From Ramazzottius varieornatus (lineage: Eukaryota; Animalia; Tardigrada): a DNA stretch of 64,000 nt. Both the position numbers and the translations under genes were made by a program. Shown one piece after another: positions 4,029-36,394 of this stretch (within the stretch, counting starts at the first letter, position 1; each line of letters starts with the position of its first letter). The notes beneath the pieces were generated by a model. The model did not search any database. It worked only from the letters and a program-made list of their open reading frames with translations, and had not been told where the DNA came from. The stretch spans positions 1,637,620 to 1,701,619 of the forward strand of contig BDGG01000004.1 in NCBI GenBank assembly GCA_001949185.1, given 5' to 3'.

Positions 4029-5603
4029 CTAGAGACGGAATCCGCAATTGAGTTACCAAAACCGGCTATATATGTGATGCTTAAGTTGAAATTATTCATA
4101 GCTTCTATGAAATGCATCTGACGTATCAGCTCCATGATGCCATTATGCGGGGTTGACAGTTTCCGCTACGCCGAGACCACAGCCATGTTGTTCGAATGGA
4201 ACAATAGCCTTTTACTTTGCCAGTTTACCCCCCAAACAACACAAGCTATATAAACTGGCAAAATTTCGAATAAGACAATGGGAGATTGGGTCTCACTAAG
4301 CCACGCAGGCCACGGCAAGAAAAACCACTCGTTTCCAAACACCGCACCACATCCAATAGATCCAGCTGCATCTGTAAACAAATGCATCAACGTTGCTGAC
4401 GTTTCATCAAGTTGAAGAACACTGCCTGTACCATTCCACCCTGGTAAGAACCTCTGCCACCATTCTATGTCTAGCTTGAAATCTTTCGTCAACTTGACTT
4501 TGTCGTGACCGTCGCGAGCTCGATTTACAAGTGCGATGAAACGACGAAGGAACATTCGAACAGCTGGGAAACATTTAGTGGCGAAGCTGAGTTTGCCAAT
4601 CGAACTCTGGAGCTCGTTCTTCGTTGCACTAGGTTTCCGATGGAAAACGGTCAGCTCATCCATTAACTCTTTCGCTTTCTGGAACAGCTATCGTTTGTTT
4701 GACGGTGTCGAGTTCTATGCCGAGAAACGTTAGCTTCGTGTTAGGACTGACAGTGTTTTCTTCGGCCATTGTTACCCATAGATAGTTGCAGAAATGACGA
4801 AAGAGATTGAGAACTCGCTGACGCTCAGGATCGTCAGGTGGACCAGCCCACCAAAAATCATCAATATAATATAGAATATGTCTGACGTGACCATAATGTC
4901 TGGCGAACCCCTAAAGCAGCTTGGTCATTTCGTCAAACAATGCTGGTGAAAAACGTCCCCCAAAAGGTAGAACCACGTCGAAATAATACTTCCCGTCCAT
5001 CTCAAAACAGAGGTAATGCCAGTGATCCATGTGAACCGGGATGAGTACTGTTGCCATCAGGGCACCCGGGCCATATCCGCTCAGAACCCGAATAGCGTCG
5101 TCCACCCCAATAAAAGTGAGACTATTGTCGGACCGATTCACGAAGTCATTGACGGATTGCTTCTCGGGACGTGATAGGTCCATTATCAAGCGCGAACCAC
5201 CATTCTACTTCGCTCGCACTCCAATAGAAGAAACGACACTATTCGCGAACGGCGGCTCATCAAAAGGTCCTACTGTATGCTTGACGGCAGCCTCCTTGGC
5301 GACATATTTCATGAGTATGTGAATGCAATCGAATGCTGTTCGAGCGTTTGGCGTTTTGCGAGGAAACTCAGGACCGCTATAACCAATGTGAAATCCATCT
5401 GTCAACCCATCCACAAAGTGTGTAACGGAATCCTGATCGGGGTATTCTTTTAACACTAACGCAAAGCGTTCGGGTATCAAAGAGATGAAGGCTTTACCCA
5501 GTACCATTATCGGGACAGGTATCACGTCGGTGGCCCTTCTGCATACATCTATCGCAAATTCGAATTTGACGTTGTAAACAAAGTTCGCTGCAACTACCAT
5601 CAT
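3980..5603 (-). pseudogene. Reverse transcriptase / RNase H of the YR retroelement
   Basis: ORF fragments 5205-5603, 4911-5189, 4166-4663 and 3806-4135 carry RT and RNase H motifs in different frames. Confidence 0.85.
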
Positions 5604-7980
5604 GCCAACGAATGCATGGCATATCTGTTCGTAAACGAGCTCTATATTTACTCCTAACCAAACCTGTACTCGTGCTGCCCAACTGTTTGGGCTCGGGGTC
5701 CTTTGTTACAGAAGCGTTACCAGCTCTATGGCCGGTATCACTCGGGAGGCGCGCAGTACCTCGATGCTGCGAACCACGATCACTTTCCGTGTGTATCAAT
5801 GGCGAGGCCATTGATAATCCCGATGTAGGTTAACAACTTGGGGTACAAGTCGGGATGGTATTATCCGCGATAGGAAGCAAAAATGACGAAGGCCTCCAAC
5901 CAGGTAGTGGAACTGTCGATCATTTGTTTCCGAGCCTTACCCGCGTACTTCAGAAGAGCGCCAGCAATATTGCTGAGAACACAATCAACGTCAGAGGACA
6001 TGTCCAGTCATAGTTCTGCGGATCAACTCAAGATTGACAAACTTATGCGGTCCCGCATAAGTTTGTCGATGGCGTCAGAAATTGGCTCAAAATTGAAAGA
6101 ACGACCCGGTGCAGCGAGCTTTGAGATAACAGCGATAACCGTAGGTGAATTTGAGATAGTAATCGTCTCCACCGGCTGACGTACGGACCTTGCAACTGAT
6201 AAGGGAGCCCCATCATCGGAAACAGTAGCTGTAGTCTCGGCTGGCGCCCCTGTTTGTTCATCGGCACCGCGGGACGCTCTCACCTGACAAGTGAGGGCAG
6301 TAAGCGCAGTAAGACTTGGTCGAACTCATCTTCCAGAGAGTTCTTCGTATTGGATCCATCAGCGACTTGAGTCTGTTCGCGCTGTCCAGAGAATGAACGA
6401 TGCGCGGCCTTTCGCTTCACGCCAGCCTTGCCGGCGGAGTGGCCCGCGAAGCTGGAGTCAGATTACTCATGGTCGTCACAAGAACAGAACCTGAATACAG
6501 GAACACAGCGTAAGAACGCACACAGCCCAAAAGAAGAACAGACCAAAAAAGCGAAAACCGATCTTCCGCTCAACACGCACACAGCAATGAGACGTTCTTT
6601 TTTTCTCTTCACCATACTTGTTTGTACACATGACAACCGTGCTTGAGACTGCTTGGCCACTGTACCCTTTTCTCGCTTCCTCTCAGAGTCCGCCAGTTAC
6701 GTCAGCCTAAGAACTACTCGAAACGCTGATTACGAGAAGCTGTAAATGTAGATTTTACACCTAACGGCGCGAATCTATATATTACAAGCCGAAAATCTGT
6801 GGTATGTCCGAGCGTTTTGCCGCGAAAAATCTAAACCCGGCTGATTTACGTGGGATAATTGTGAAAAACCTCGTCAATATGGCCATTTTTTAAGCTTATG
6901 TCTACTGCAACCCGTATTTTTTGTCTATTTTTGGAAAATGATTGCACAGAACTGTTTTGTGCAAATGCAGTAGTTGTTGGTCCGACATTTTACTCGCACC
7001 ATATCACTTTTATACGTTATAAACTACTCGGTTTGTAAAATGTAAACTGGTGTAAAATGTAATTACAATTTTATAATTACACCATTTTACATTACAATTT
7101 ACATTACACGGACCATCTGCGTGTAATGCTCATCACTAGCTGCTGGAGCGTGAAACACGGGCTCAAGCGCTTGATTAATTGTGTTCCGCTGGGAAGTGGG
7201 CAGGGCGACATGGCCCTGTGCGTCATATCTAATGTCACACGGTATGTAATGAAATGTCATGCATTTATAGCGAAACTCAAAACAAGTTTTTCGGTTAATC
7301 AAGGCACGAGAACAACGGAAAAACACTGATTGACTCAATTTTCGCATAGACCACAGTCACCACACGATCAACGCAGTAAAAAGCAGCATCCGATGCCTTG
7401 AACCGAGCTGCTCCACAGTGGTAGTCTGCGCCGCGTACGCAGCACTGACGTGTATGGTGGAGTTCGTGACAACGTAACATACAGCATTTCACGCTTTGAG
7501 CGTTCTGGCAAGCCATGTCAAAGTGAAGGCCATATTTAGCAGCTCGTCACTGAACAAGATTCTAACTTCGGAAAAATTTTAGGTATTGCGCAACATTCAA
7601 AAAGTGACGTCAAATGATCAACTGCTAATAAATTTGCTGATTGACTCCCAGGATAGCTAAGATCAATGGATCAATCAAGCGGGAAATATGAGTCACGCAC
7701 TTGAACGGCATTGCAGTAGGCGTTTCCCGGTGTCAATTTTCGCAATTAGAGCTGTGAAACGTGGAGCGCTGTACCTGTAGCTGGTGCCTGGTTTGTACGA
7801 TCTACGGATCTTCTAATTCGGGTTCCGGTCTCAGATCATCTTCCTCCATCAAAATTTTGACGCTCAATCCTCTTTTGCCGCTATGTCGGGACGTCAGACG
7901 AGTTTAAGATCGGGCGTTGTGCTCCTGTGACGGATTGCGAATCAGGTGTGCGGTGTCCAATAAACTCCAGCTGCTGCAGG

Positions 7981-10233
7981 ATGGCTACTTCCGTCCATGG
8001 CTTCCAAGACATATCTGCCGAAAATTCCGAAGTCACGGAGGTTGAAAGTCTCTGTTTAGCCTGCGAGCGAAATGTAAGTGCAAACTTGTACATCACTGCC
8101 GAGTGAAACCAGTCGTAAACGAAGACCGATTGAGCTAGTATGACTCCCATATCTCTATAGGGGACGACAAGGCTTCTTATGGTCAAGATACCCTTCTACA
8201 AGGAAATATTCGTTTCTTCGTTCTCATGCCCGCACTGTGGATACAACAATTGCTCATCCATGGCTGGACAGGAGATACAGGAAGAAGCGTCGGAAATTAC
8301 GCTGCTGGTCAAGACACCCCGGGTATATAGAGTTAACTGTTACAGTTAGCCTATGAAGTCCAGAACAGTGAGCACTGATGCGACATTCTGCACGGGTTCC
8401 ACGGAGTCGAAATAGAAGATGTGCTTTGACAAATGCTACCCCTGGTGTGTTTTGTCTATTTGCCTCTAGCAATTTCTCTGTTTAGGATATGAACCGAACA
8501 GTTGTAATGTCCGATTATGCGGCGCTCAAGATACCCGAACTGGACTTCGAAGCTCCTTACCGCCGGCAAAGCTTTGGAGTGACGACGGTCGAAGGTGTGA
8601 TAACCAAAGTCAAAGAAATGATCGAGAAGTTTATGGTATATATAGCTTCAGAGTCTACTGTACGTTTCTCTTGTAAGAAAAATGAGAATGACTAACCGAC
8701 TACGGCTTTCCACTAGGAAGCTCGAGGGAGTACCGAAGAGGGTATCCGGGAACTCGGGCAGTTCGTTCCGAAGTTAGATGCTTGTTTACGCATGCAAAGC
8801 CCCTTTCATTTAGTGAGTTAAACCTTCTGCTTATTCTTCGTATCGCCAAGTGCATCAGAGTGAAGCTGGAGTTCTTTCCAGGTAATCGACGATCCTTCCG
8901 GCAACAGCTTTGTTGAAAACCCTCACGCACCTAATCCGGACCCCGGACTTACCATACGGACCTACGCACGAAACCAAGAGCTTGATGAGTTGGTTGGGAT
9001 CATGGTATGACGCCTTCGCGATCACTCACATGCTCATATTGTTGCTGTTCTCAATTTGGTACGGTTCCGTGGCCGTCTGTGTCAGAGCCCCAGTTTTGTT
9101 GTTTAGCCAAGTACCACAGACTCTAGCGAGGGACCACGAGAAAAAACCGACCCCGTTGACGAGGTAAAATGCACCACTGGTTGATCGTTTCGCGTGACCC
9201 ACGCGCTAACGACAGGTTGCTGTTTCACAGGTGATGGTCTTCCCAACCACATGCTACAACTGCAAGGCGGAATGTGTCACCAACATGAAAACCGTTGGTG
9301 AGATATCTCATCGAATTTTCGATTTTTAAATGCTCTGGACGTTACCAAGTCTCGTGGTTAAGTAAACCATAAATCTTCTAGACGTTCCTCATTTCAAAGA
9401 AATACTTATCATGTCGTCTCAATGCGACAAGTGCGGATGGAGAAACAACGAGGCAAAGCCATCTGGTGGCATCGAGGAAGAAGGATGCATCATTGATCTT
9501 CTGGTAGCTGGTACCGAGGACCTGGACCGACATGTCATCAAAGTGATTCAACCATTTCAGCTCGTTCCATGGGATATGGAATCGCTTCTGCCCGTTTATT
9601 CACAATTTTTGGTTTTGTTACTGCGGATAATTTGAATGAATTGTTCTCGACTATAGTCGTCAACATGTGCCCTGCGGATACCGGAACTGGATTTCGAGAT
9701 GCTAGCCAGTGACCATTCCAGCCGTTATAGTAACGTGGAAGGCCTTCTCAGCAACATCAAAGACGAGGTTTGTCTTTATTACGTACAATCATTCCGCGAC
9801 TTTCACTCTTGAAAATTCTGTTATAGTTGGTGGATAAGAATCCGTTTATTCATGGAGATAGCGCCAGCACTGCAACAACAGACAAATTGGCAGAATTCGG
9901 AACTGTTTTACAAGAGGTAGGTTCCGCTTCCGCTGTGCCCTGCGTTCGCTTCAGCCAGTTCATTTTCGATTAGGTCATTGAGGGGAAACGACAAATACAT
10001 TTCATCCTCGACGACCCAGCGGGGAACAGCTTTATCGAAGTAAGTTTGTCACGGTCTTCAAAATCGACAGTAGCCAGAAAAGCTCCACTTCTTTCCTATT
10101 CTAGACACTTCTGTCCAATGATAAAGACGAAAGACTTAGCATAAAAAGGTACAAGAGAAATGCTGAACAAGATATAGAACTTGGTATAGCGGAGATGAAC
10201 ACTGAAAACTATGATGAAAACACTGAAAAATAA
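7981..10233 (+). CDS. ZPR1: Zinc finger protein ZPR1, multi-exon
   Basis: [53 protein letters not shown], second finger PTTCYNC...[41 protein letters not shown]. Confidence 0.93.
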
Positions 10234-29461: not shown

Positions 29462-31009
29462 CTTTTCGAGTCATACAGCTTCAGTAGCAATGCATGTTAC
29501 TGGTGAGTATGGACGTTAAGACGGCAGAGAAGCGCGAAACGAAAGTACGAAAGGAAGAACAGGATCCCAGAGAACAATTCAAAAACATAGACGAGCTGCT
29601 GAATATGGCATCCACTTTGACATGGCTTGCCAACACTCTGAAAGCGGAAAACGCTGTTTGCGAGTCATCACAAACTTCATCATACCGATTAGTACTGCGT
29701 ACATGGCGCAGACTCCCAGTGTGGAGAACGTGGTTCAAACCCTGTGGCACAGCTTTATACTGCCTTTCCGTCTGGTCCGGAATACTAGTCCGTCATGGCC
29801 ACCTTAATTTGATGTACGTTGCCGCTTCGACCGGCTGCCAGCTGCTTTTTCCATGGCATCAGTTAGGCCAGGCGCGTGCACACCCTTTCATAGGGGAAAC
29901 TCTTTCCTTGTACAGGGGCAGGTGGTCAGCCAAAGGGTGACCACTGGTCAGTCGTTACTTGTGGGTGCGCAGAGGTGCGCGTTGGTTATCGAATGCCCCT
30001 CATTAAACCAGCAACTTCATGTTGTTAGATGCGTTCTTGAGCCCATAGGAGTAAATCACCCAGTTCCAAATGATTTTTTTCATTTTTTGTATTTCATCTA
30101 GAACCATTCACGACTGCAATGTTTTTTCTTCTGACTCTGTTTAGTTATGCTTGAGTTTGGCGAGACGGTTTTCTTTTGTTGCTGGCAGTCCTTGATTAAA
30201 TGAAAAGCTCATTATGGGTTTTGCTGTAGGTTACATCACACCATGTTCTGTGTATCGTGTACATTTGACGTCCACCGTATCGGCCATACCTTCTTGTTAG
30301 CGGAACGTAATCAATCGGTCGCTCAATCAGGTGTCTTACGCTCCAGTAAGGCCATATTCAGCGGCTTGCTATGCTTTGCCTTCGCAGCACTTTACCGTCA
30401 AAATGTCTTCGGGGGTTTGCGAATTTTGCCTTCAGTATAACCTTCAGCGTATCCAGACAACTACTAAACTCGTAACCGTACTGCACCACAATTTCGAAAA
30501 ATAATCGTAACACCGCACCGTAACTCGTACCCCTCACAACGATGTACACTCAGCATACTGAAACGCCGCAGCCGAAATAGCGGCCACGGCCAAGCCAGTT
30601 GCTTGGGTTTGCAACGCAAGAAAATTTATTTTTCACTTGTTTCCGCCTTTCTCCTCGCTTTCTTCCTGGATCTGTTTTGACTTTCGCTGCCACCTCGCCA
30701 TGGAACACTCATCGTATATTTCGGATGAGAATGACGACAACGAGATAGTGTTCGATGGTATCTTCCCATCTGGTTCGCCCAACAGCACTGGCTGCAGTGG
30801 GGGTGTCAAACGCCTGAAAACTGAGGACATCAGTCAAGATATACTCCCCGATCGTTCTACAAGCGCTTTCGACGCGGAATGGGACAACCAAGACGAGTCG
30901 GACGAACTGACTATGAATTCTGTCATCCTCGACGACGATCCTAATATTCCGAGCACTTCTTCTGGAGTTGGAAGGTACGTTTTCAAATTTTCCAACGTAT
31001 CTCAAAAAC

Positions 31010-31240
31010 ACTTATAAACCACTGGACCTGCAAATGTTCACGCCGGCGAAGTTGTCTTCGTATAAGCCGTCGAAGTTATCACTTTACACGCCGGCGGAAA
31101 TGCCACTGCACAAGCCGGCGAAGTCCGTATCCTATCGTCTCAGTTGTCATTGTACGCGCCGGTGGAGACGGCAGACCACACGCCGGCGTGGATGTTACTC
31201 CTCACGCCGGCGAAATCCGTGTACATGCCGTACTCGCCGA
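31010..31240 (+). repeat. 24-bp minisatellite (core TACACGCCGGCGAAG) in transposase intron 1
   Basis: About 9 degenerate units; related arrays at 31730-31825 and 33145-33290, and in inverse at 33372-33442. Confidence 0.75.
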
Positions 31241-31407
31241 TTGAGATGACGATATGTACGGTGTTTGTGTGGTTTATTTGCACTATGTAGTCCACAAATG
31301 CAATATTCATTGCAAGCAATATATCGATTGGATATTTCAGGAACTTTGCAATCTTCAAAGACTCTTCGGTGAACAATGCTGATAGGTCGGTTGTATATAT
31401 GTTGGAA

Positions 31408-31410
<3 letters not shown>

Positions 31411-31437
<27 letters not shown>
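31411..31437 (+). repeat. (GAC)9 microsatellite encoding poly-Asp
   Basis: GAC x9 within the predicted second exon. Confidence 0.9.
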
Positions 31438-31438
<1 letters not shown>

Positions 31439-33496
31439 CATCAGCTATCACCGGCGCCTCCACGCACAGCAGCGCTAATGAGCCAGTGCACATGTGCATT
31501 ACCCCGTAAGTAGTCGGGATTATGAGCAGCGCACAAGTGACTCCAGCGTTAACTGGATCACTTACCTGTTGCAGGGAGACATCGTTTTCTGTATCAGACC
31601 ATGAGCCAAAACGAATATCTCAGCCAGTGGTTACATTTTCTGGACGTGGAAATCTTGCCTTAGGAGCTCCCGTGGCGGACAGCGCTCTGGGACCATGTTA
31701 TGAGATGTGAGTCAAGCTGCTTCTTTTCAATACATGCCGGCAGAGTTTTTACTGTATAAACCTGTGAAGATGCCGTTGTATAAGCCGATGAAGATGCTGG
31801 TGTGCACGCCGACGGAGTTGTCAACGTAGTGAAATCTAACATCATATTGCTTCCTGCAGAGATAACCTTTATCGTTGTTTCCAAACGGTGGAAAGCGATG
31901 CGTCAGTTCTCGCCTGGTTGTGTAATCCAGAAGTCCTTGATGCGTACAAATATCACCGAATACCTCAGCGCTTCCGAAGTCAAGCGTGGTTTGCCGTTTC
32001 CTTCCGGTCCGAGCAAAGAGAACGGATCTACGGACTAATTCTGGGCGACGGGAACGGCAGCTGGAAAGAATCAAATGAACGGTTTGGTAGTGGTAGCAAG
32101 CATGATGACGACCAGACGCCGTTCTTATTCATGAAGAAGGACTGGTATAGTCGACCTAATGGGAAGCCTAATGGCTTCAAGCGACGTCTTCTTGTAATTG
32201 TGTCGTCAGAGGGCTGCAGCAAGCCAGTCGAGTTTTTCTTCGTGATCCAGTATGTATGGTCCGACGAAAGCAAGATCGCACCATTCCCGCCTGGGAAAAC
32301 CTACACCAACCGCGCTATCACAAGCGCGAGCAAGAAGCTAGCGTCACCTGTTGCACGCGGCAAGCCCATGAGCCCTAGAGACATCGTTCTCGAAGTTGCG
32401 TCAACTATACCCGAAATCAACCGCGAGGTGAACCCATATTATCGACCGAAAGATATGCGACAGGTCATGACCATCAGAAACACGGTCAACAAGAACACAT
32501 ACGGAGAAGACGTGGAAAGCTACCTGCGAAGGAAGGAAGGGGTCATTCTTCGTCAGTACCAGAACGAGGATGGATCGGAGTCTGAGAATTTCGTCGTGGT
32601 AGATCCGTACCACGTTGAGCTGATAGCGACGAACGGCGACCAAAAGCTAAAGTGTGAGTCGATTAAGGTCAGAGCGATTGCCTATTCCGGCAATGTTGAC
32701 AAAGTACACGCCAGCGATATTTACGCTGTAAACACCGGCAGTCTTTGGGCGATGACAAATCTCAGCACTGATTTGAAAAACACCATCAGAAGAACTTTGT
32801 CGAGAAACTAATCCTACCGGCACGTGAAAAGATGGGTTTCTCGCGCGACCTTCCTAATACTAATCTGTCTGAGGCCATGAACAAAACGCTCAAAGCCTTT
32901 TGTGGCACGCACAACGATCCCCGGGAAGTGGTTGAGAGGTTGCTTAAGATGTACGCCGATGAAACTGTGTTCATGTTGCAGGCCCTGAAAGATCAAGGCC
33001 GATACAGAATAGCCGAGCAGTACAGAGAAGACCTTCTCCTGTCGCGAGAGAAAGCACACGACAATACCCACATAATGTCCAAAGTGCAACGGTTGTTCTC
33101 CCAGTGCAACGTGAACACCATGGTTGTCGTTGCATTGAGTCGAAAAGTAAGTACCAGCGGAGTTGTTGCAAGTAGGCCGGTGGTGTTAGTACGTTTTGTT
33201 GGCGAAGATGCTGCATTGTCCGCCGTCGGAGTTGCCAAAGCCTACGCGAGCAGAGCTGCCGCGCTTTGTGCCGGTGAAGTCTTGTTGGTTCGTCTAATAG
33301 TAGAACAGGTACATAGTGCTCGTCTGTAACTGTGACATGTTGTAGGTCGATTTGTCGGGAGATGGAACAAGACCACTTCGCCGGCCTGTACAGTAATTAC
33401 TTCGCCGGCCTGTACAGTAACCACTTCGCCGGCCTGTACAGACCGTTCATGCAATGCCAACACCCGTTACAGAGAAACAACTACAATCCAGCCCTG

Positions 33497-35118
33497 TTAT
33501 TTGAAACTACGGTACGAACCCTCGGGAACAGTTTCTTCCAGTTCGGGAACTTGTTGGACGGGCACCAGGAAGGAGACGATCTTACCGTTCTCCACCTTGC
33601 TTTGGACCATGAACTGCTGACCTGGAGTTCCGGCAGGACTTCCAGCAGGAACGGCTGTAACGATGGTGCTCACAGGTAGCATTTCGGTCATGGCTAACTG
33701 AAAAACAAGCAAATACGTAATAGCATGTGCTGGATTTTCCGTCATAACCGTAATAAATAGCTCTCACCGGCTGGCACCTTTTTCCTCGCACCAGTGTTCT
33801 TCGCTCTTTTGATTTTCTTGATACTGGATGGGTTTTCCAGTCGGTTAATCGACTTCTCAGATGAACTGGCTGGCTCTAAGCTGTGCGCTTTTCCGTTGTC
33901 GGTCAAGGTGGTCAACTCGCATTCGAGCGCTGAAGCCATGCTGGGCGGCTCCAGCGACTGACAGCCTGCAGCTAAAATATTATCTCCCGCAGACAGTCCT
34001 GCATCAATTCTCGCTTGTTTACTGCTCGTCGTACCTGGAAAAATATTGAAAATGAATATCCTGTGAGCGGAATTCAATGGAAAATTCAATGGGATGAACA
34101 TACAGCATAAATAATTTTCCAGACATTCGAGAGTCAAGGTACACTACCGAAATGTTCGGTTGAACCCGCGCATTACTTAGACTGCTTCGGCACTAGAGGT
34201 AAAATTTTTTGAAGTTACCCCTAGGTTCGGCAGTCGCGCCTCCTCTGCTTCCACCTTTTCCTCGGCCTCTGGCGGGAGATACTCCGTTGATAGGCACAGG
34301 ATTGGAGCTTTGAAACACATTGGCTTTTTCCGCCGTCATCTGCAAAGAACTGGTCCTGTCTGCCTGGGCCGTTCTCTTTCCGGTCTTCATACTCTTGATT
34401 CCGCTGCAAAATTAAACATCACTCAACGTAATGCATAAGTCTATCCGGAGAAAACAAACGTGAATTTTTCCCCAGAGTTTATACCTGGCCTCCATCAAGG
34501 CGCCGTTCTCGGCCGAGGCCTTGGCATTGTTCTCTGTGTTCTGCAACATCAGCGAATCGCTGTACATCCACTCGTCATACCTGAAGAGGAGAAATCATCA
34601 GACATCTTCCTTCTGCCGCATCCGATGGATGTCGGAGCCTGCTTACCGTTTTCCCCAACCCGGGTAATGGATTCTGTAGATGGGCACGGATGTCGTCTCA
34701 TCTCCGGAATACTTGTACGTTTCGATCAGAATAAGCTTAGCTTCGTGCCACTGTCCCTTACTGATGACCCATACATCGTCACCTGCAACACAAGCACCAG
34801 TAATCAGCAAAAGCAGTCGGGAGAAAGAAATGATTCGACACTGAAAGTGCGAAGCTATGACCAGCTACCGACCTCTTTCCGCAACTTCGTGTGGGTCGAG
34901 ATTATGCGCGACTTGATCTGGGTGATCATCAATCAGAGGTTTTCTAGAGACGTACCTATGCTGAATTTCTTCATGAAATCTTCGAGACGCATTTCTGTGT
35001 GGTCGTTCAGCTCCTTCTTCATGTTTCTGTTTGGTGTGCTGGGAGCAGGGTTGATGGTCATGATCGGCGGAGGGATGCCTCCGTGTGAAGGGGCACTGCA
35101 CGTCGATGTCTTGTCCAT
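33497..35118 (-). CDS. Transposon-borne chromo-barrel (Tudor-knot, MRG15/MSL3/Esa1-type) protein
   Basis: Exons 34782-34647 and 34580-34485 splice in phase to GDDVWVISKGQWHEAKLILIE...YRIHYPGWGKRYDEWMYSDSLMLQNTEN; later exons are basic or low complexity (ARGRGKGGSRGG, KKIKRAK); 5' and 3' exon structure less certain. Confidence 0.72.
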
Positions 35119-36394
35119 GGCGCTGTAAAACAGAACGACACGCTGTTTCCACTCAACCGACAAACAGTGATTGTCCGCGCAATGGGAGGGGATGTTCCAG
35201 GCAGCAACTTGTGATGAAGATGGCTTTTGATTTCGCAGGTCACGGCAGGTGTCAAAACTTCGAAGAATCATGAATCGAAGAGATACGGAGAAGCGGGGAA
35301 TTCGTGAAATCTCACGGTATGTCGCCCAGTCAGCGGTTACCGTGCGGAAAAAAGGAAATCAAATAATCAAGTAGCGATGGGCGGGTACGGCGTTCGGTGG
35401 TGTGGTATTTGGTTGAGCTAGTTCTAGTCAATATGCAGCGAAGACACGTTGAAGGCATAGTTCGCAAACCCTTGAAGACATGTCGACGGTAAAGTGCTGC
35501 GAAGGCAGAGCATAGCAAGCCATATTCAGCAGCTCGTCTATGTTCAAAGACTTGTCAAATGGCTACGCCCGTCTTCACTCTTCAGCAATCAAGTTAAACG
35601 AAACCGAAATTGCAAATTTCCGTGTCGTCATACCGGACGGTGACGTAGGACGCCACCGGTGACGACTGCAGGAACACATTCCGCTTATAGCGGGTCTGCG
35701 GCATCTTCGGGGTATTTGGGAACTAGATTTCCGCCTGTTAGTGTCAGACACAGTCTCCGCGTGTAGGGGGGGGGGGGGCTCATTTTTCGAACCTCAAAAA
35801 TCGAAGCTTCTTCTGAATCTTTTCGAGTTTATGTGATGTTGCCTTTTCCGATTCTCCGTAGTGGATCTGCTCCGGATTCTCGTATCAATGTGGGTTAGTT
35901 GCGACTTGCAAGATTCTGCCGTGACCCGATGAGCGAGGTTGATCAGTGATCACTTGGCAGGAAGGACGCAACAGCAGCAGGATTCTGACAGCAGTGAGAT
36001 ACGCCGCTGGAAGGTAGAAGACAGCGTCGAGCCTTGTACTGTTCCCTTTTCGACGCACATCAAAACCGTTTGAATTCGGGACAGACAGCCGATGTGGGTA
36101 GCAGCGTCGGTTGCAGCTTCTTGAAGTAAGTTCATGTAACACGGAACATGACTGTAACTCTGTCCTTTCTATGAAAGCGGTATCCACCAAACTATACTCT
36201 AATTTCGTCTTAATTATGCACACACGTGACGAGGGCGCGACGTGATTATGCCCGGAATGATATTATACAGTACCAAAACGTTTGGTACAGTACCAGTAAT
36301 TTTGGTACTGTACCAAAACGCCTAACGCGAAGCTAAGGGTGATATCGTTTTCCTTCGGTTTACAGGATACACAAGTCCTCAGAACTGCTGAGCC

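What the first reader, a model, noticed from the sequence alone, without database searches (positions are those of the whole stretch)
29586..35542. DNA transposon carrying its own spliced chromo-barrel (Tudor-knot) chromatin-reader gene
Seen: between 24-bp TIRs and an 8-bp TSD lie two convergent intron-containing genes. Plus strand: a Mutator-like transposase. Minus strand: a gene invisible in the ORF track whose exons join to GDDVWVISKGQWHEAKLILIE...YRIHYPGWGKRYDEWMYSD, followed by RGRGKGG and basic segments. Established: EAK...Y.IHY.GW...(W/Y)DEW is the signature of MRG15/MSL3/Esa1 chromo-barrel domains, which bind methyl-lysine histone tails or nucleic acid; chromodomain targeting is well known in chromovirus LTR integrases, and some plant MULEs carry anti-silencing genes. 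No MRG or MYST domain follows, so this is not an intact host gene. Inference: a two-component transposon whose accessory protein steers insertion or counters silencing. I do not recall this combination being described, but cannot confirm novelty without a search.
Basis: partly seen in the sequence, partly recalled or inferred. Interest (0 to 1): 0.85.

Follow-up and report, generated by a model that had tools for sequence, protein, structure and literature searches.

The report
Mutator transposon with captured histone-reader gene
This is a decayed copy of a tardigrade Mutator-type jumping gene that carries, beside its transposase, the front half of one of the host's own histone-mark-reader genes; several lineages of the transposon have kept that stolen piece under selection, so it probably serves the transposon.

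Summary
Its 24-bp TIRs and 8-bp TSD belong to a ~0.5-kb MITE. The real element is window 30363-35521, a Mutator-like element (MULE) with 72-bp TIRs and a perfect 9-bp TSD (ATATTCAGC), inserted into that MITE's right TIR.

The genome is Ramazzottius varieornatus. The window copy is a derivative with two internal deletions: it has lost the MULE-domain core and the SWIM finger. Full copies of 7-10 kb lie elsewhere in the genome.

The minus-strand gene is confirmed by GT..AG joints in RNA contigs. Annotated products of sister copies pass Pfam Tudor-knot and fold like the MSL3 and MRG15 chromo barrels.

New here: the gene is a DNA-level capture, introns included, of the 5' part (aa 1-~259) of the single-copy host gene RvY_18288. 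That gene encodes a chromo barrel plus an MRG-like C-terminus and has orthologues in two other tardigrades. In full copies the captured part is spliced onto transposon-native exons.

At least three diverged MULE lineages carry it, in the same convergent position, under purifying selection (omega about 0.2-0.4). It is neither a recent passive capture nor an invention of the transposon. Function (tether or decoy) is inferred only. The scan noted a sister copy before (s1-794188).

The parts
29586..30362 (.). Left and main part of an unrelated ~0.5-kb MITE (24-bp TIR, CATAGACGAG...). Its 8-bp TSD is at 29578-29585 and 35543-35550.
   Evidence: I7, I11; copies L033 and L034 have the same TIR and perfect 8-bp TSDs..
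29792..30082 (.). A second, ~291-bp dispersed repeat nested inside the MITE.
   Evidence: about 20 matches at 80-96% identity to query 207-497. MITE copies L033 and L034 lack it.
30354..30362 (.). Left copy of the MULE's 9-bp target-site duplication, ATATTCAGC. The right copy is at 35522-35530.
   Evidence: All seven A/A' copies have 9-bp TSDs: five perfect, two matching 8 of 9.
30363..35521 (+). The real element: a 5159-bp internally deleted copy of a Mutator-like element (subfamily A).
30363..30434 (+). Left terminal inverted repeat (72 nt, starts GGCTTGCTATGC).
   Evidence: I1: 90% complementary to 35450-35521..
35450..35521 (-). Right terminal inverted repeat.
   Evidence: I1.
30700..32811 (+). 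Transposase remnant. Exons are 30700-30974, 31341-31505, 31575-31706 and 31860-32742. After deletion junction 1 the frame reads on to a premature stop at 32809-32811.
   Evidence: GT..AG joints in RNA contigs.
32742..32743 (.). Deletion junction 1. About 700 bp present in full copies (L022:2873-3572) are missing, including the stretch that matches Pfam MULE.
33374..33375 (.). Deletion junction 2, with 4-nt microhomology (GACC). Between 1.4 and 3.9 kb of the full copies are missing: the SWIM finger, the transposase C-terminus, and the downstream exons of the accessory gene including exon X1.
33497..35118 (-). Accessory (chromo-barrel) gene. Exons: E1 35118-34956, E2 34782-34647, E3 34580-34485, E4 34403-34219, E5 34034-33768, E6 33693-33520. 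In this copy E6 reads through to a stop at 33497-33499. In full copies it splices on from a donor at 33519/33520.
   Evidence: Joints; canonical splice sites; phases and per-exon translations; the loose end at 33518 matches L023 exactly.
34485..34782 (-). Exons 2 and 3, which encode the chromo barrel, split by intron 34581-34646.
33863..35132 (-). Tract homologous to host gene RvY_18288 (C18), running from 14 nt upstream of the ATG to mid exon 5, introns included.
   Evidence: C18 match at 78% over query 4278-5547..
31035..31214 (+). Array of ~24-nt repeats with a GCCGGCGAAGT core, inside transposase intron 1. Inverted copies lie at 33375-33441. They may be transposase-binding sites.
   Evidence: I2-I6, I8, I10. 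The function is inferred only.

Best explanation
Window 30363-35521 is a non-autonomous, twice-deleted copy of a low-copy Mutator-like element (MULE) of the tardigrade Ramazzottius varieornatus. It is inserted, with a 9-bp TSD, into the right TIR of an unrelated MITE.

Full-length relatives (7-10 kb) encode a multi-exon MULE/SWIM transposase on one strand. Convergent to it, next to the other TIR, lies an accessory gene. The 5' half of that gene (start codon, exons 1-4 and part of exon 5, with their introns) was copied at the DNA level from the single-copy host gene RvY_18288. RvY_18288 is an EAF3/MRG15/MSL3-like protein with a chromo barrel and an MRG-like C-terminus. The captured part keeps the chromo barrel and an RGG-like basic stretch but lacks the MRG domain. 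In full copies it is spliced onto transposon-native exons (E6, X1).

Shown: the anatomy, the splicing, the host origin, the presence in subfamilies A, A', B and C, and purifying selection while the gene resided in the transposon.

Inferred: the chimeric protein works for the transposon. My preferred mechanism, at odds of about 0.4, is an adaptor. The stolen reader would bind methyl-lysine histone marks of the H3K36me/H4K20me class, and the transposon-native C-terminus would connect to the transposition machinery, biasing where the element integrates or is expressed. The family now looks largely decayed: every long copy examined has a stop or frameshift in this gene.
For: Ends. All copies start and end at window 30363 and 35521 with 9-bp TSDs. 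A B-type copy, L047:1138-6055, has related TIRs and a 9-bp TSD.

Transposase. There are repeated sub-threshold Pfam MULE hits (E 9e-6 to 9e-3) and a weak SWIM hit. The nearest ESM-atlas clusters with a named family are all MULE/ZSWIM. Sources name relatives 'MULE transposase domain-containing' and 'SWIM-type'.

Splicing. Five minus-strand and three plus-strand GT..AG joints appear in contigs of runs from two studies. The contigs differ 3-4% from the window, and one loose end equals copy L023 exactly.

Fold. Annotated products of sister copies score 30-31 bits on Pfam Tudor-knot against a cut-off of 20.8. A profile of the spliced products hits only MRG-type chromo barrels in the PDB, best MRG701 at 3.5e-9. 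An AF2 model has pLDDT 91-95 over residues ~101-182 and matches MSL3 3oa6 (TM 0.85, rmsd 1.7 A) and MRG15 2f5k.

Host origin. P0008 (RvY_18288) aligns end to end with the Paramacrobiotus 'EAF3 homolog', which carries a Pfam MRG domain. P0008 residues 260-633 match only C18, whereas residues 1-259 match every transposon copy. Exon identity is 86% and intron identity 72%.

Retention. Chromo-barrel exons lie convergent to transposases that share only 55% (B) or about 27% (C) amino-acid identity with subfamily A.

Selection. A versus A' gives omega about 0.2 (p about 1e-4). The B stem gives 0.19 (p 8e-10) and the A stem 0.43 (p 0.03). Exons are more conserved than introns.

Chimera. Exon X1 occurs only in transposon copies. 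A related metagenomic MULE (L049) has an E6-like exon but no detectable barrel. A database gene model, P0014, joins barrel exons to X1.
Against: No experiment or binding data exist, and the mechanism is pure inference.

Pfam MULE and SWIM stay below the curated cut-offs. The window's own barrel exon alone scores 18.4 bits, below 20.8.

The first aromatic-cage Tyr of MRG15, EAF3 and MSL3 is His here and in the host protein.

Within subfamily A, omega is 0.5-0.7 and exon identity equals intron identity, so present copies are decaying neutrally. L022, L025, L026 and L032 have in-frame stops, and L021 and L023 have frameshifts in exon 4.

The barrel module is less diverged between A and B (pS 0.56) than the transposase is (pS 0.81, saturated). 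Capture may therefore have been repeated, or refreshed by conversion from the constrained host gene, which would inflate the apparent constraint.

The runs are only guessed to be RNA. The evidence from L049 rests on one 45-residue match.
Confidence: 0.6

Rival explanations
1. Decoy or anti-silencing factor. The reader-only fragment of the host EAF3/MSL3-like protein competes with the full-length host protein for the same histone marks but cannot recruit its MRG-domain partners. This would locally blunt a host repression pathway, for example Rpd3S-type suppression of internal promoters, and so keep the element expressed. The role would resemble that of VANC in plant VANDAL MULEs.
For: It derives from the very host protein it would compete with. 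It has been under purifying selection. Both the host gene and the transposon gene are transcribed: the spliced host 5'UTR shows up as a loose end at 35118.
Against: A simple decoy would not need the fusion to conserved transposon-native exons. With about 8 copies and modest contig depths, stoichiometric competition looks hard. No data exist on the host protein's role.
Confidence: 0.25
2. Passive passenger. This would be a Pack-MULE-like transduplicate with no function for the element. The low dN/dS would arise because the module was repeatedly copied or converted from a constrained host gene, and because tblastn-based codon alignments favour conserved stretches.
For: MULEs are known to capture host fragments (PMC6446971). 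The host parent exists at 86% exon identity. The module is younger than the A/B transposase split, and the upstream region looks mosaic. Present copies decay neutrally, and the long copies carry disabling mutations.
Against: The A versus A' comparison lies wholly within transposon lineages and still gives omega about 0.2 (p about 1e-4), with exons at 92% identity against introns at 86%. Even if about 30% of the B stem were host-lineage evolution, the transposon part would need omega about 0.2. The module sits at the same position and orientation in three lineages whose transposases share as little as 27% identity. It is spliced in frame onto native exons.
Confidence: 0.2
3. One reading: one two-gene transposon bounded by the 24-bp TIRs at 29586 and 35542, with an 8-bp TSD.
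For: The inverted repeat is perfect (I7).
Against: No other copy of the two-gene element extends beyond 30363 or 35521. The 24-bp TIR family exists independently as ~495-bp MITEs with 8-bp TSDs. A perfect 9-bp TSD flanks 30363-35521 inside the MITE's TIR.
Confidence: 0.02
4. Reverse direction: the host gene RvY_18288 acquired its N-terminal reader from the transposon (domestication).
For: In the short protein tree the host sequence sits on a zero-length branch among the transposon clades.
Against: Barrel plus MRG is the ancestral MRG15/EAF3/MSL3 architecture. Hypsibius and Paramacrobiotus orthologues have the barrel at the same place. Subfamily B also carries the host's 5'UTR exon and 5'UTR intron.
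Confidence: 0.03

Closest known systems
MuDR of maize (mudrA transposase plus convergent mudrB helper gene)
   Same: It is a MULE with long TIRs and a 9-bp TSD. It has two intron-containing genes transcribed convergently from the two ends, the second being an accessory protein (architecture as summarised in PMC6446971).
   Different: I found no sequence similarity to mudrB, and Pfam gives nothing for the native exons. Here the accessory gene's 5' half is a recognisable host chromatin-reader fragment, and the host is an animal.
Pack-MULEs and MULE transduplication of host gene fragments (plants)
   Same: A host gene fragment, introns included, is copied at the DNA level between MULE TIRs and expressed from the element.
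   Different: Pack-MULEs are non-autonomous and their cargo is mostly neutral. Here the cargo sits in transposase-bearing elements. It is fused in frame to native exons, conserved across diverged lineages and under purifying selection. It occurs in a tardigrade.
VANDAL/Hiun MULEs of Arabidopsis, which encode VANC anti-silencing proteins
   Same: It is a MULE with extra ORFs that act on host chromatin for the element's benefit (PMC6446971). This is the closest functional precedent for the decoy reading.
   Different: VANC is not a histone reader and is not known to be a host gene fragment. Plant DNA-methylation biology may not apply here. No homology was tested or seen.
Chromoviruses (Ty3/gypsy integrase chromodomain, e.g. 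MAGGY) and transposon-reader fusions catalogued by Grau-Bove et al. (10.1101/2021.11.30.470311), including hAT plus Chromo in a sponge
   Same: A mobile element has co-opted a methyl-lysine reader, with chromatin tethering as the proposed use.
   Different: Those are classical chromodomains or PHD fingers fused to the integrase or transposase itself.
Host MRG15/EAF3/MSL3 family (RvY_18288 and its tardigrade orthologues)
   Same: The barrel fold is the same, the HY.GW...DEW motif is kept, the intron positions match, and exon identity to RvY_18288 is 86%.
   Different: The MRG domain is absent. The C-terminus is replaced by transposon-native sequence. The gene is multi-copy, lies inside TIRs, and uses a different promoter region.

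Membership tests
Mutator-like elements (MULE superfamily) | Target-site duplication of 8-11 bp, typically 9 | tested here: met
   Seven of seven A/A' copies have a 9-bp TSD (five perfect, two matching 8 of 9), and so does a B-type copy.
Mutator-like elements (MULE superfamily) | Long terminal inverted repeats | tested here: met
   The TIRs are 72 nt and 90% complementary. The termini (GGCTTG[C/G]TATGC) are conserved between subfamilies A and B.
Mutator-like elements (MULE superfamily) | Transposase with the MULE (PF10551) DDE domain | tested here: inconclusive
   Five of seven annotated fragments and the L022 ORF hit PF10551 at E 9e-6 to 9e-3, scoring 17-26.5 bits against a cut-off of 27.6. 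The ESM-atlas neighbours with a named family are all MULE/ZSWIM. The window copy itself has lost this stretch.
Mutator-like elements (MULE superfamily) | SWIM-type zinc finger C-terminal to the catalytic domain | tested here: inconclusive
   PF04434 gives E 0.036, 14 bits against a cut-off of 19.6, on L022:4184-4750. A CxC...CxH motif is visible in that ORF. UniRef names the relatives 'SWIM-type'. The motif is absent from the window copy.
Chromo barrel / Tudor-knot of the MRG15-EAF3-MSL3 class | Pfam Tudor-knot (PF11717) above the gathering score | tested here: met
   The window's exon 2 alone scores 18.4 bits, below 20.8. The annotated spliced products of sister copies (92-96% identical in exon 2) score 30-31 bits. 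The window's own joined product was not searched, by instruction.
Chromo barrel / Tudor-knot of the MRG15-EAF3-MSL3 class | Beta-barrel plus C-terminal helix fold | tested here: met
   The AF2 model of P0038 has pLDDT 91-95 over the domain. Its top Foldseek hits are MSL3 3oa6 (TM 0.85, rmsd 1.7 A), MRG15 2f5k, MRG701 and Eaf3.
Chromo barrel / Tudor-knot of the MRG15-EAF3-MSL3 class | Aromatic cage for methyl-lysine | tested here: inconclusive
   Y of IHY, W of GW and W of DEW are kept. The Tyr of the YEAK/YDAK position is His (WHEAK), as it is in the host protein. Which residues form the cage is taken from my memory of the MRG15 and Eaf3 structures.
MRG15/EAF3/MSL3 proteins (full family membership) | C-terminal MRG domain (PF05712) | tested here: not met
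   No MRG domain appears in any transposon copy. P0008 residues 260-633 match only the host locus. No Pfam MRG hit was found in the transposon products.
Pack-MULE | Host gene fragment carried between MULE TIRs | tested here: met
Pack-MULE | Non-autonomous element without a transposase gene | tested here: not met
   Full copies L021, L022 and L023, and B copies L045 and L046, carry the transposase together with the captured gene. The window copy is non-autonomous only because of later deletions.

The most novel reading that the evidence does not exclude
An animal cut-and-paste transposon lineage has stolen the histone-mark reader of a host EAF3/MSL3-like chromatin protein, possibly more than once or with later refreshment from the host gene. 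This would be a DNA-transposon counterpart of the chromovirus chromodomain or of LEDGF-guided retroviral integration, with the donor gene still identifiable.
Probability: 0.35. Interest if true: 0.8.

Novelty: new variant of a known kind. Interest (0 to 1): 0.6.

Why it matters
Gene capture by MULEs is well documented in plants, where the cargo is mostly dead weight. Chromatin readers in mobile elements are known mainly as domains fused to retrotransposon integrases.

This case differs in four ways. The donor host gene, the capture boundaries and the introns are all still visible. The cargo sits in transposase-bearing elements of an animal. It is spliced onto a native accessory gene. It was kept under selection in several diverged lineages.

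That makes a concrete question testable: can a cut-and-paste transposon acquire target or chromatin specificity, or a counter-defence, by stealing the reader module of a host chromatin complex? It also flags a little-studied tardigrade EAF3/MSL3-like gene.

Tried and rejected
- **Joined product not built.** Exons were searched one by one by reference. The spliced product was studied through database proteins of sister copies (P0009, P0010, P0038, P0039).
- **Pfam on other ORFs.** Pfam on the window's other ORFs and on the native exons (E6, X1, X2) gave nothing usable.
- **Protein tree unresolved.** A tree with Hypsibius and Paramacrobiotus outgroups has no starred branch. Single versus repeated capture therefore stays open. 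The DNA tree is unrooted.
- **'881-aa open frame' at C20.** This is an artefact of an assembly gap translated as X.
- **Right ends of B copies.** The right ends of the C1 and C22 copies were not found in L031 or L032. L047 supplied a complete B-type copy instead.
- **The look-up of encoding contigs.** It returns nothing for this genome's own proteins, so the insertion context relative to annotated genes could not be tabulated.
- **ESM atlas.** On the native part of P0014 it scored 0.80 or less, which is a lead only.
- **Literature.** Searches found no MULE with an MRG or Tudor-knot gene. Absence from the held library is not proof of absence.
- **Complex prediction.** I did not run it. The full transposase and the native C-terminus exist only as multi-exon models that I may not join, and a blank would say nothing.

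Full report
**1. What is at the coordinates**

Its flanks are TTCAAAAA and TTCAAAGA. A search of the window's own genome with 29586-35542 shows something else, though. Every other copy of the two-gene region starts at query 777/778 and ends at 5936/5937, which is window 30363 and 35521.

Those positions carry 72-nt TIRs (I1) starting GGCTTGCTATGC. In all seven copies they are flanked by 9-bp duplications. In the window the duplication is a perfect ATATTCAGC at 30354-30362 and 35522-35530.

The outer 24-bp TIRs belong to an independent ~495-bp MITE family. Its intact copies, L033 and L034, have perfect 8-bp TSDs and carry the sequence ATATTCAGC once, inside their right TIR. So the larger element jumped into the MITE's TIR. 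The MITE also holds a further nested 291-bp repeat at 29792-30082.

**2. The element and its family**

Source names identify the genome as Ramazzottius varieornatus. TIR matches indicate about eight copies of this subfamily (A and A'), with no swarm of MITE derivatives.

Three copies are long, at 7.3, 8.8 and 9.7 kb (L021, L022, L023). Compared with them, the window copy lacks about 700 bp at 32742/3 and 1.4-3.9 kb at 33374/5. The junctions show short microhomology, as expected from abortive gap repair.

In L022 the plus strand carries ORFs with sub-threshold Pfam MULE (E 3.6e-4) and SWIM (E 0.036) matches. Five of seven annotated fragments of relatives hit PF10551, and the ESM-atlas neighbours with a named family are all MULE/ZSWIM clusters. 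Together with the 9-bp TSDs and long TIRs, this places the family in the Mutator superfamily, although the curated Pfam cut-offs are not reached.

The window keeps only the transposase's first four exons. Their GT..AG introns at 30975-31340, 31506-31574 and 31707-31859 are seen as joints in RNA contigs. The frame then runs into a premature stop after deletion 1. The MULE-matching stretch and the SWIM finger are gone.

**3. The minus-strand gene**

Contigs of four public runs (three studies; typed as RNA only by guess) were laid on 29586-35542. Contigs of three of these runs (X1-X3, two studies) show five joints with GT..AG on the minus strand.

The exon phases give one open frame from the ATG at 35118 through six exons.

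The contigs differ from the window by 3-4%. One continues beyond 33518 into sequence that matches copy L023 exactly. Two non-canonical joints reproduce the deletion structure of the C7 copy. Sister copies are therefore transcribed and spliced. Error-free contigs also cross the window-specific junctions at 30362/3 and 33374/5 (table 8), which suggests the window copy is transcribed too.

In L023 exon 6 splices from GAAG|GTTCGT to a further exon. In the window that exon was deleted, and the frame reads through to a stop at 33497.

**4. Is it a chromo barrel?**

Exon 2 alone scores 18.4 bits on Pfam Tudor-knot, below the cut-off of 20.8. Twelve of 17 homologous exons from other copies also hit it. 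An exon-2 profile finds plant MRG chromodomains as its only PDB matches.

A whole-library profile search returned annotated spliced proteins of sister copies: RvY_12404, RvY_05203 and RvY_16976. These score 30-31 bits on Tudor-knot. A profile of them hits only MRG701, Eaf3, MRG2, MSL3, MRG15 and ARID4A barrels.

An AF2 model of P0038 has one confident domain, with pLDDT 91-95. It superposes on the MSL3 and MRG15 barrels at TM 0.82-0.87.

Three aromatic positions are kept: the Y of IHY, the W of GW and the W of DEW. The Tyr of the YEAK position is His.

**5. Where the gene came from**

The best hit of the profile search, P0008 (RvY_18288, 633 aa, contig C18), has the same first ~260 residues followed by a long C-terminus. 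It aligns end to end (E 3e-72) with a Paramacrobiotus protein named 'EAF3 homolog', which carries a Pfam MRG domain. Hypsibius has an orthologue too.

In the genome, P0008 residues 260-633 match only C18, whereas residues 1-259 match all transposon copies. No transposase or TIR lies near the C18 gene.

Homology between the window and C18 is continuous over 1.27 kb, from 14 nt upstream of the ATG to mid exon 5, introns included. Exon identity is 86% and intron identity 72%.

The transposon gene is therefore a DNA-level transduplicate of the 5' part of a host reader gene. The RNA loose end at 35118 is the host mRNA with its 5'UTR intron removed.

**6. Not a recent passenger**

The barrel exons occur at about 20 places in the genome. 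In subfamily B they lie convergent to a transposase only about 55% identical to that of A, with related TIRs and a 9-bp TSD. In subfamily C the transposase is about 27% identical.

Selection, from codon comparisons summed exon by exon:
- Within A, omega is 0.53-0.68 and exon identity equals intron identity, which is neutral decay after insertion.
- A versus A' gives 0.18-0.21, with exons at 92% identity and introns at 86%.
- A versus B gives 0.12-0.21 at dS about 1.
- A three-clade parsimony count gives omega 0.43 on the A stem (p 0.026), 0.19 on the B stem (p 8e-10) and 0.13 on the host branch. The A versus A' excess of synonymous changes has p about 1e-4.

Caveats:
- The barrel module is less diverged between A and B (pS 0.56) than the transposase is (pS 0.81).
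- Subfamily B also contains the host 5'UTR exon and intron.
- Upstream of the ATG, subfamily A looks more like B than like the host.

This mosaic fits one old capture followed by host-to-A conversion, or repeated capture. I could not decide between them.

**7. A chimera with native exons**

Exon X1, a Lys-rich coiled-coil segment, occurs only in transposon copies of A and B. A database gene model of a B copy (P0014) joins barrel exons to X1.

A 9.5-kb metagenomic contig (L049) carries a transposase 52% identical to that of A. It also has an E6-like exon on the opposite strand, but no detectable barrel.

This suggests, weakly, that a convergent accessory gene existed before the capture and that the host reader was grafted onto its 5' end.

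**8. How it most likely works**

Shown: the anatomy, the splicing, the host origin, the retention and the past constraint.

Inferred: the protein served the element.
- I favour an adaptor (odds about 0.4).
- The main rival is a reader-only decoy of the host protein (about 0.25).
- A functionless passenger remains possible (about 0.2).

The family is now mostly broken. There are stops in L022, L025, L026 and L032, and exon-4 frameshifts in L021 and L023. The barrel ORF is intact only in the window and C7 copies, both deletion derivatives.

**9. Comparison and novelty**

The architecture is that of MuDR, with convergent transposase and helper genes. The origin is Pack-MULE-like. The possible role recalls VANC, or the chromodomain of chromoviruses. 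Fusions of transposable elements with Chromo and PHD readers, including hAT plus Chromo in a sponge, have been catalogued (10.1101/2021.11.30.470311).

I found no report of a MULE carrying an MRG/MSL3-type barrel, nor of a retained transduplicated reader in an animal MULE. I class it as a new variant of a known kind.

The scan had already noted a sister copy (s1-794188, which corresponds to L026). Another note reports chromodomains in two other DNA transposons of this genome.

Noticed in passing
window 29586-30362 plus 35531-35542; L033:501-995; L034:505-1058: A ~495-bp MITE family with 24-bp TIRs (CATAGACGAG...) and 8-bp TSDs, which is hAT-like in TSD length. In the window its left 240 bp are part of a very abundant, error-free contig (depth about 500) that runs out of the stretch to the left. 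It probably lies in the UTR of a highly expressed neighbouring gene.
   Followed up: partly
window 29792-30082: A 291-bp dispersed repeat nested in the MITE, with about 20 copies at 80-96% identity across the genome. It often has a short inverted match beside it.
   Followed up: no
window 31035-31214, 31740-31830, 33150-33300 and (inverted) 33375-33441; L049:2664-2762, 5403-5531, 6684-6800, 8747-8975: Arrays of ~24-nt repeats sit inside the transposase introns and, in inverted orientation, in the other half of the element. The core is GCCGGCGAAGT here. The related metagenomic MULE has a different core, CCGGAGAGGT. They could be internal transposase-binding sites.
   Followed up: no
G000:C18:305277-308419 (L027, L048): The host gene RvY_18288 is a divergent EAF3/MSL3-like protein whose MRG domain is too diverged for Pfam in Ramazzottius. 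It has a 5'UTR intron ending 4 nt before the ATG, and it is expressed: a spliced 5'UTR appears in RNA contigs.
   Followed up: partly
L041 (G000:C3:2305145-2305285), L042 (G000:C4:2133261-2133404); P0025, P0026: Two further, much more distant barrel-like exons (31-38% identity to exon 2). One has a Hypsibius homologue (BV898_13705). They are probably other host reader genes.
   Followed up: no
L050 (ENA ERZ28593185 scaffold_73714) and ENA proteins P0013, P0018, P0020-P0023: Environmental metagenome contigs encode close relatives of barrel exons 1-3 (52-68% identity). They presumably come from other tardigrades. Whether they are host genes or transposon copies is unknown.
   Followed up: partly
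window 31403-31447: A run of GAC codons (poly-Asp) in transposase exon 2. The reads tool skipped it as a repeat.
   Followed up: no
L040 (G000:C20:349500-351650 approx.): An assembly gap (Ns) inside a B-type copy produces spurious open frames of 742-881 aa in the ORF and genome-search outputs.
   Followed up: yes
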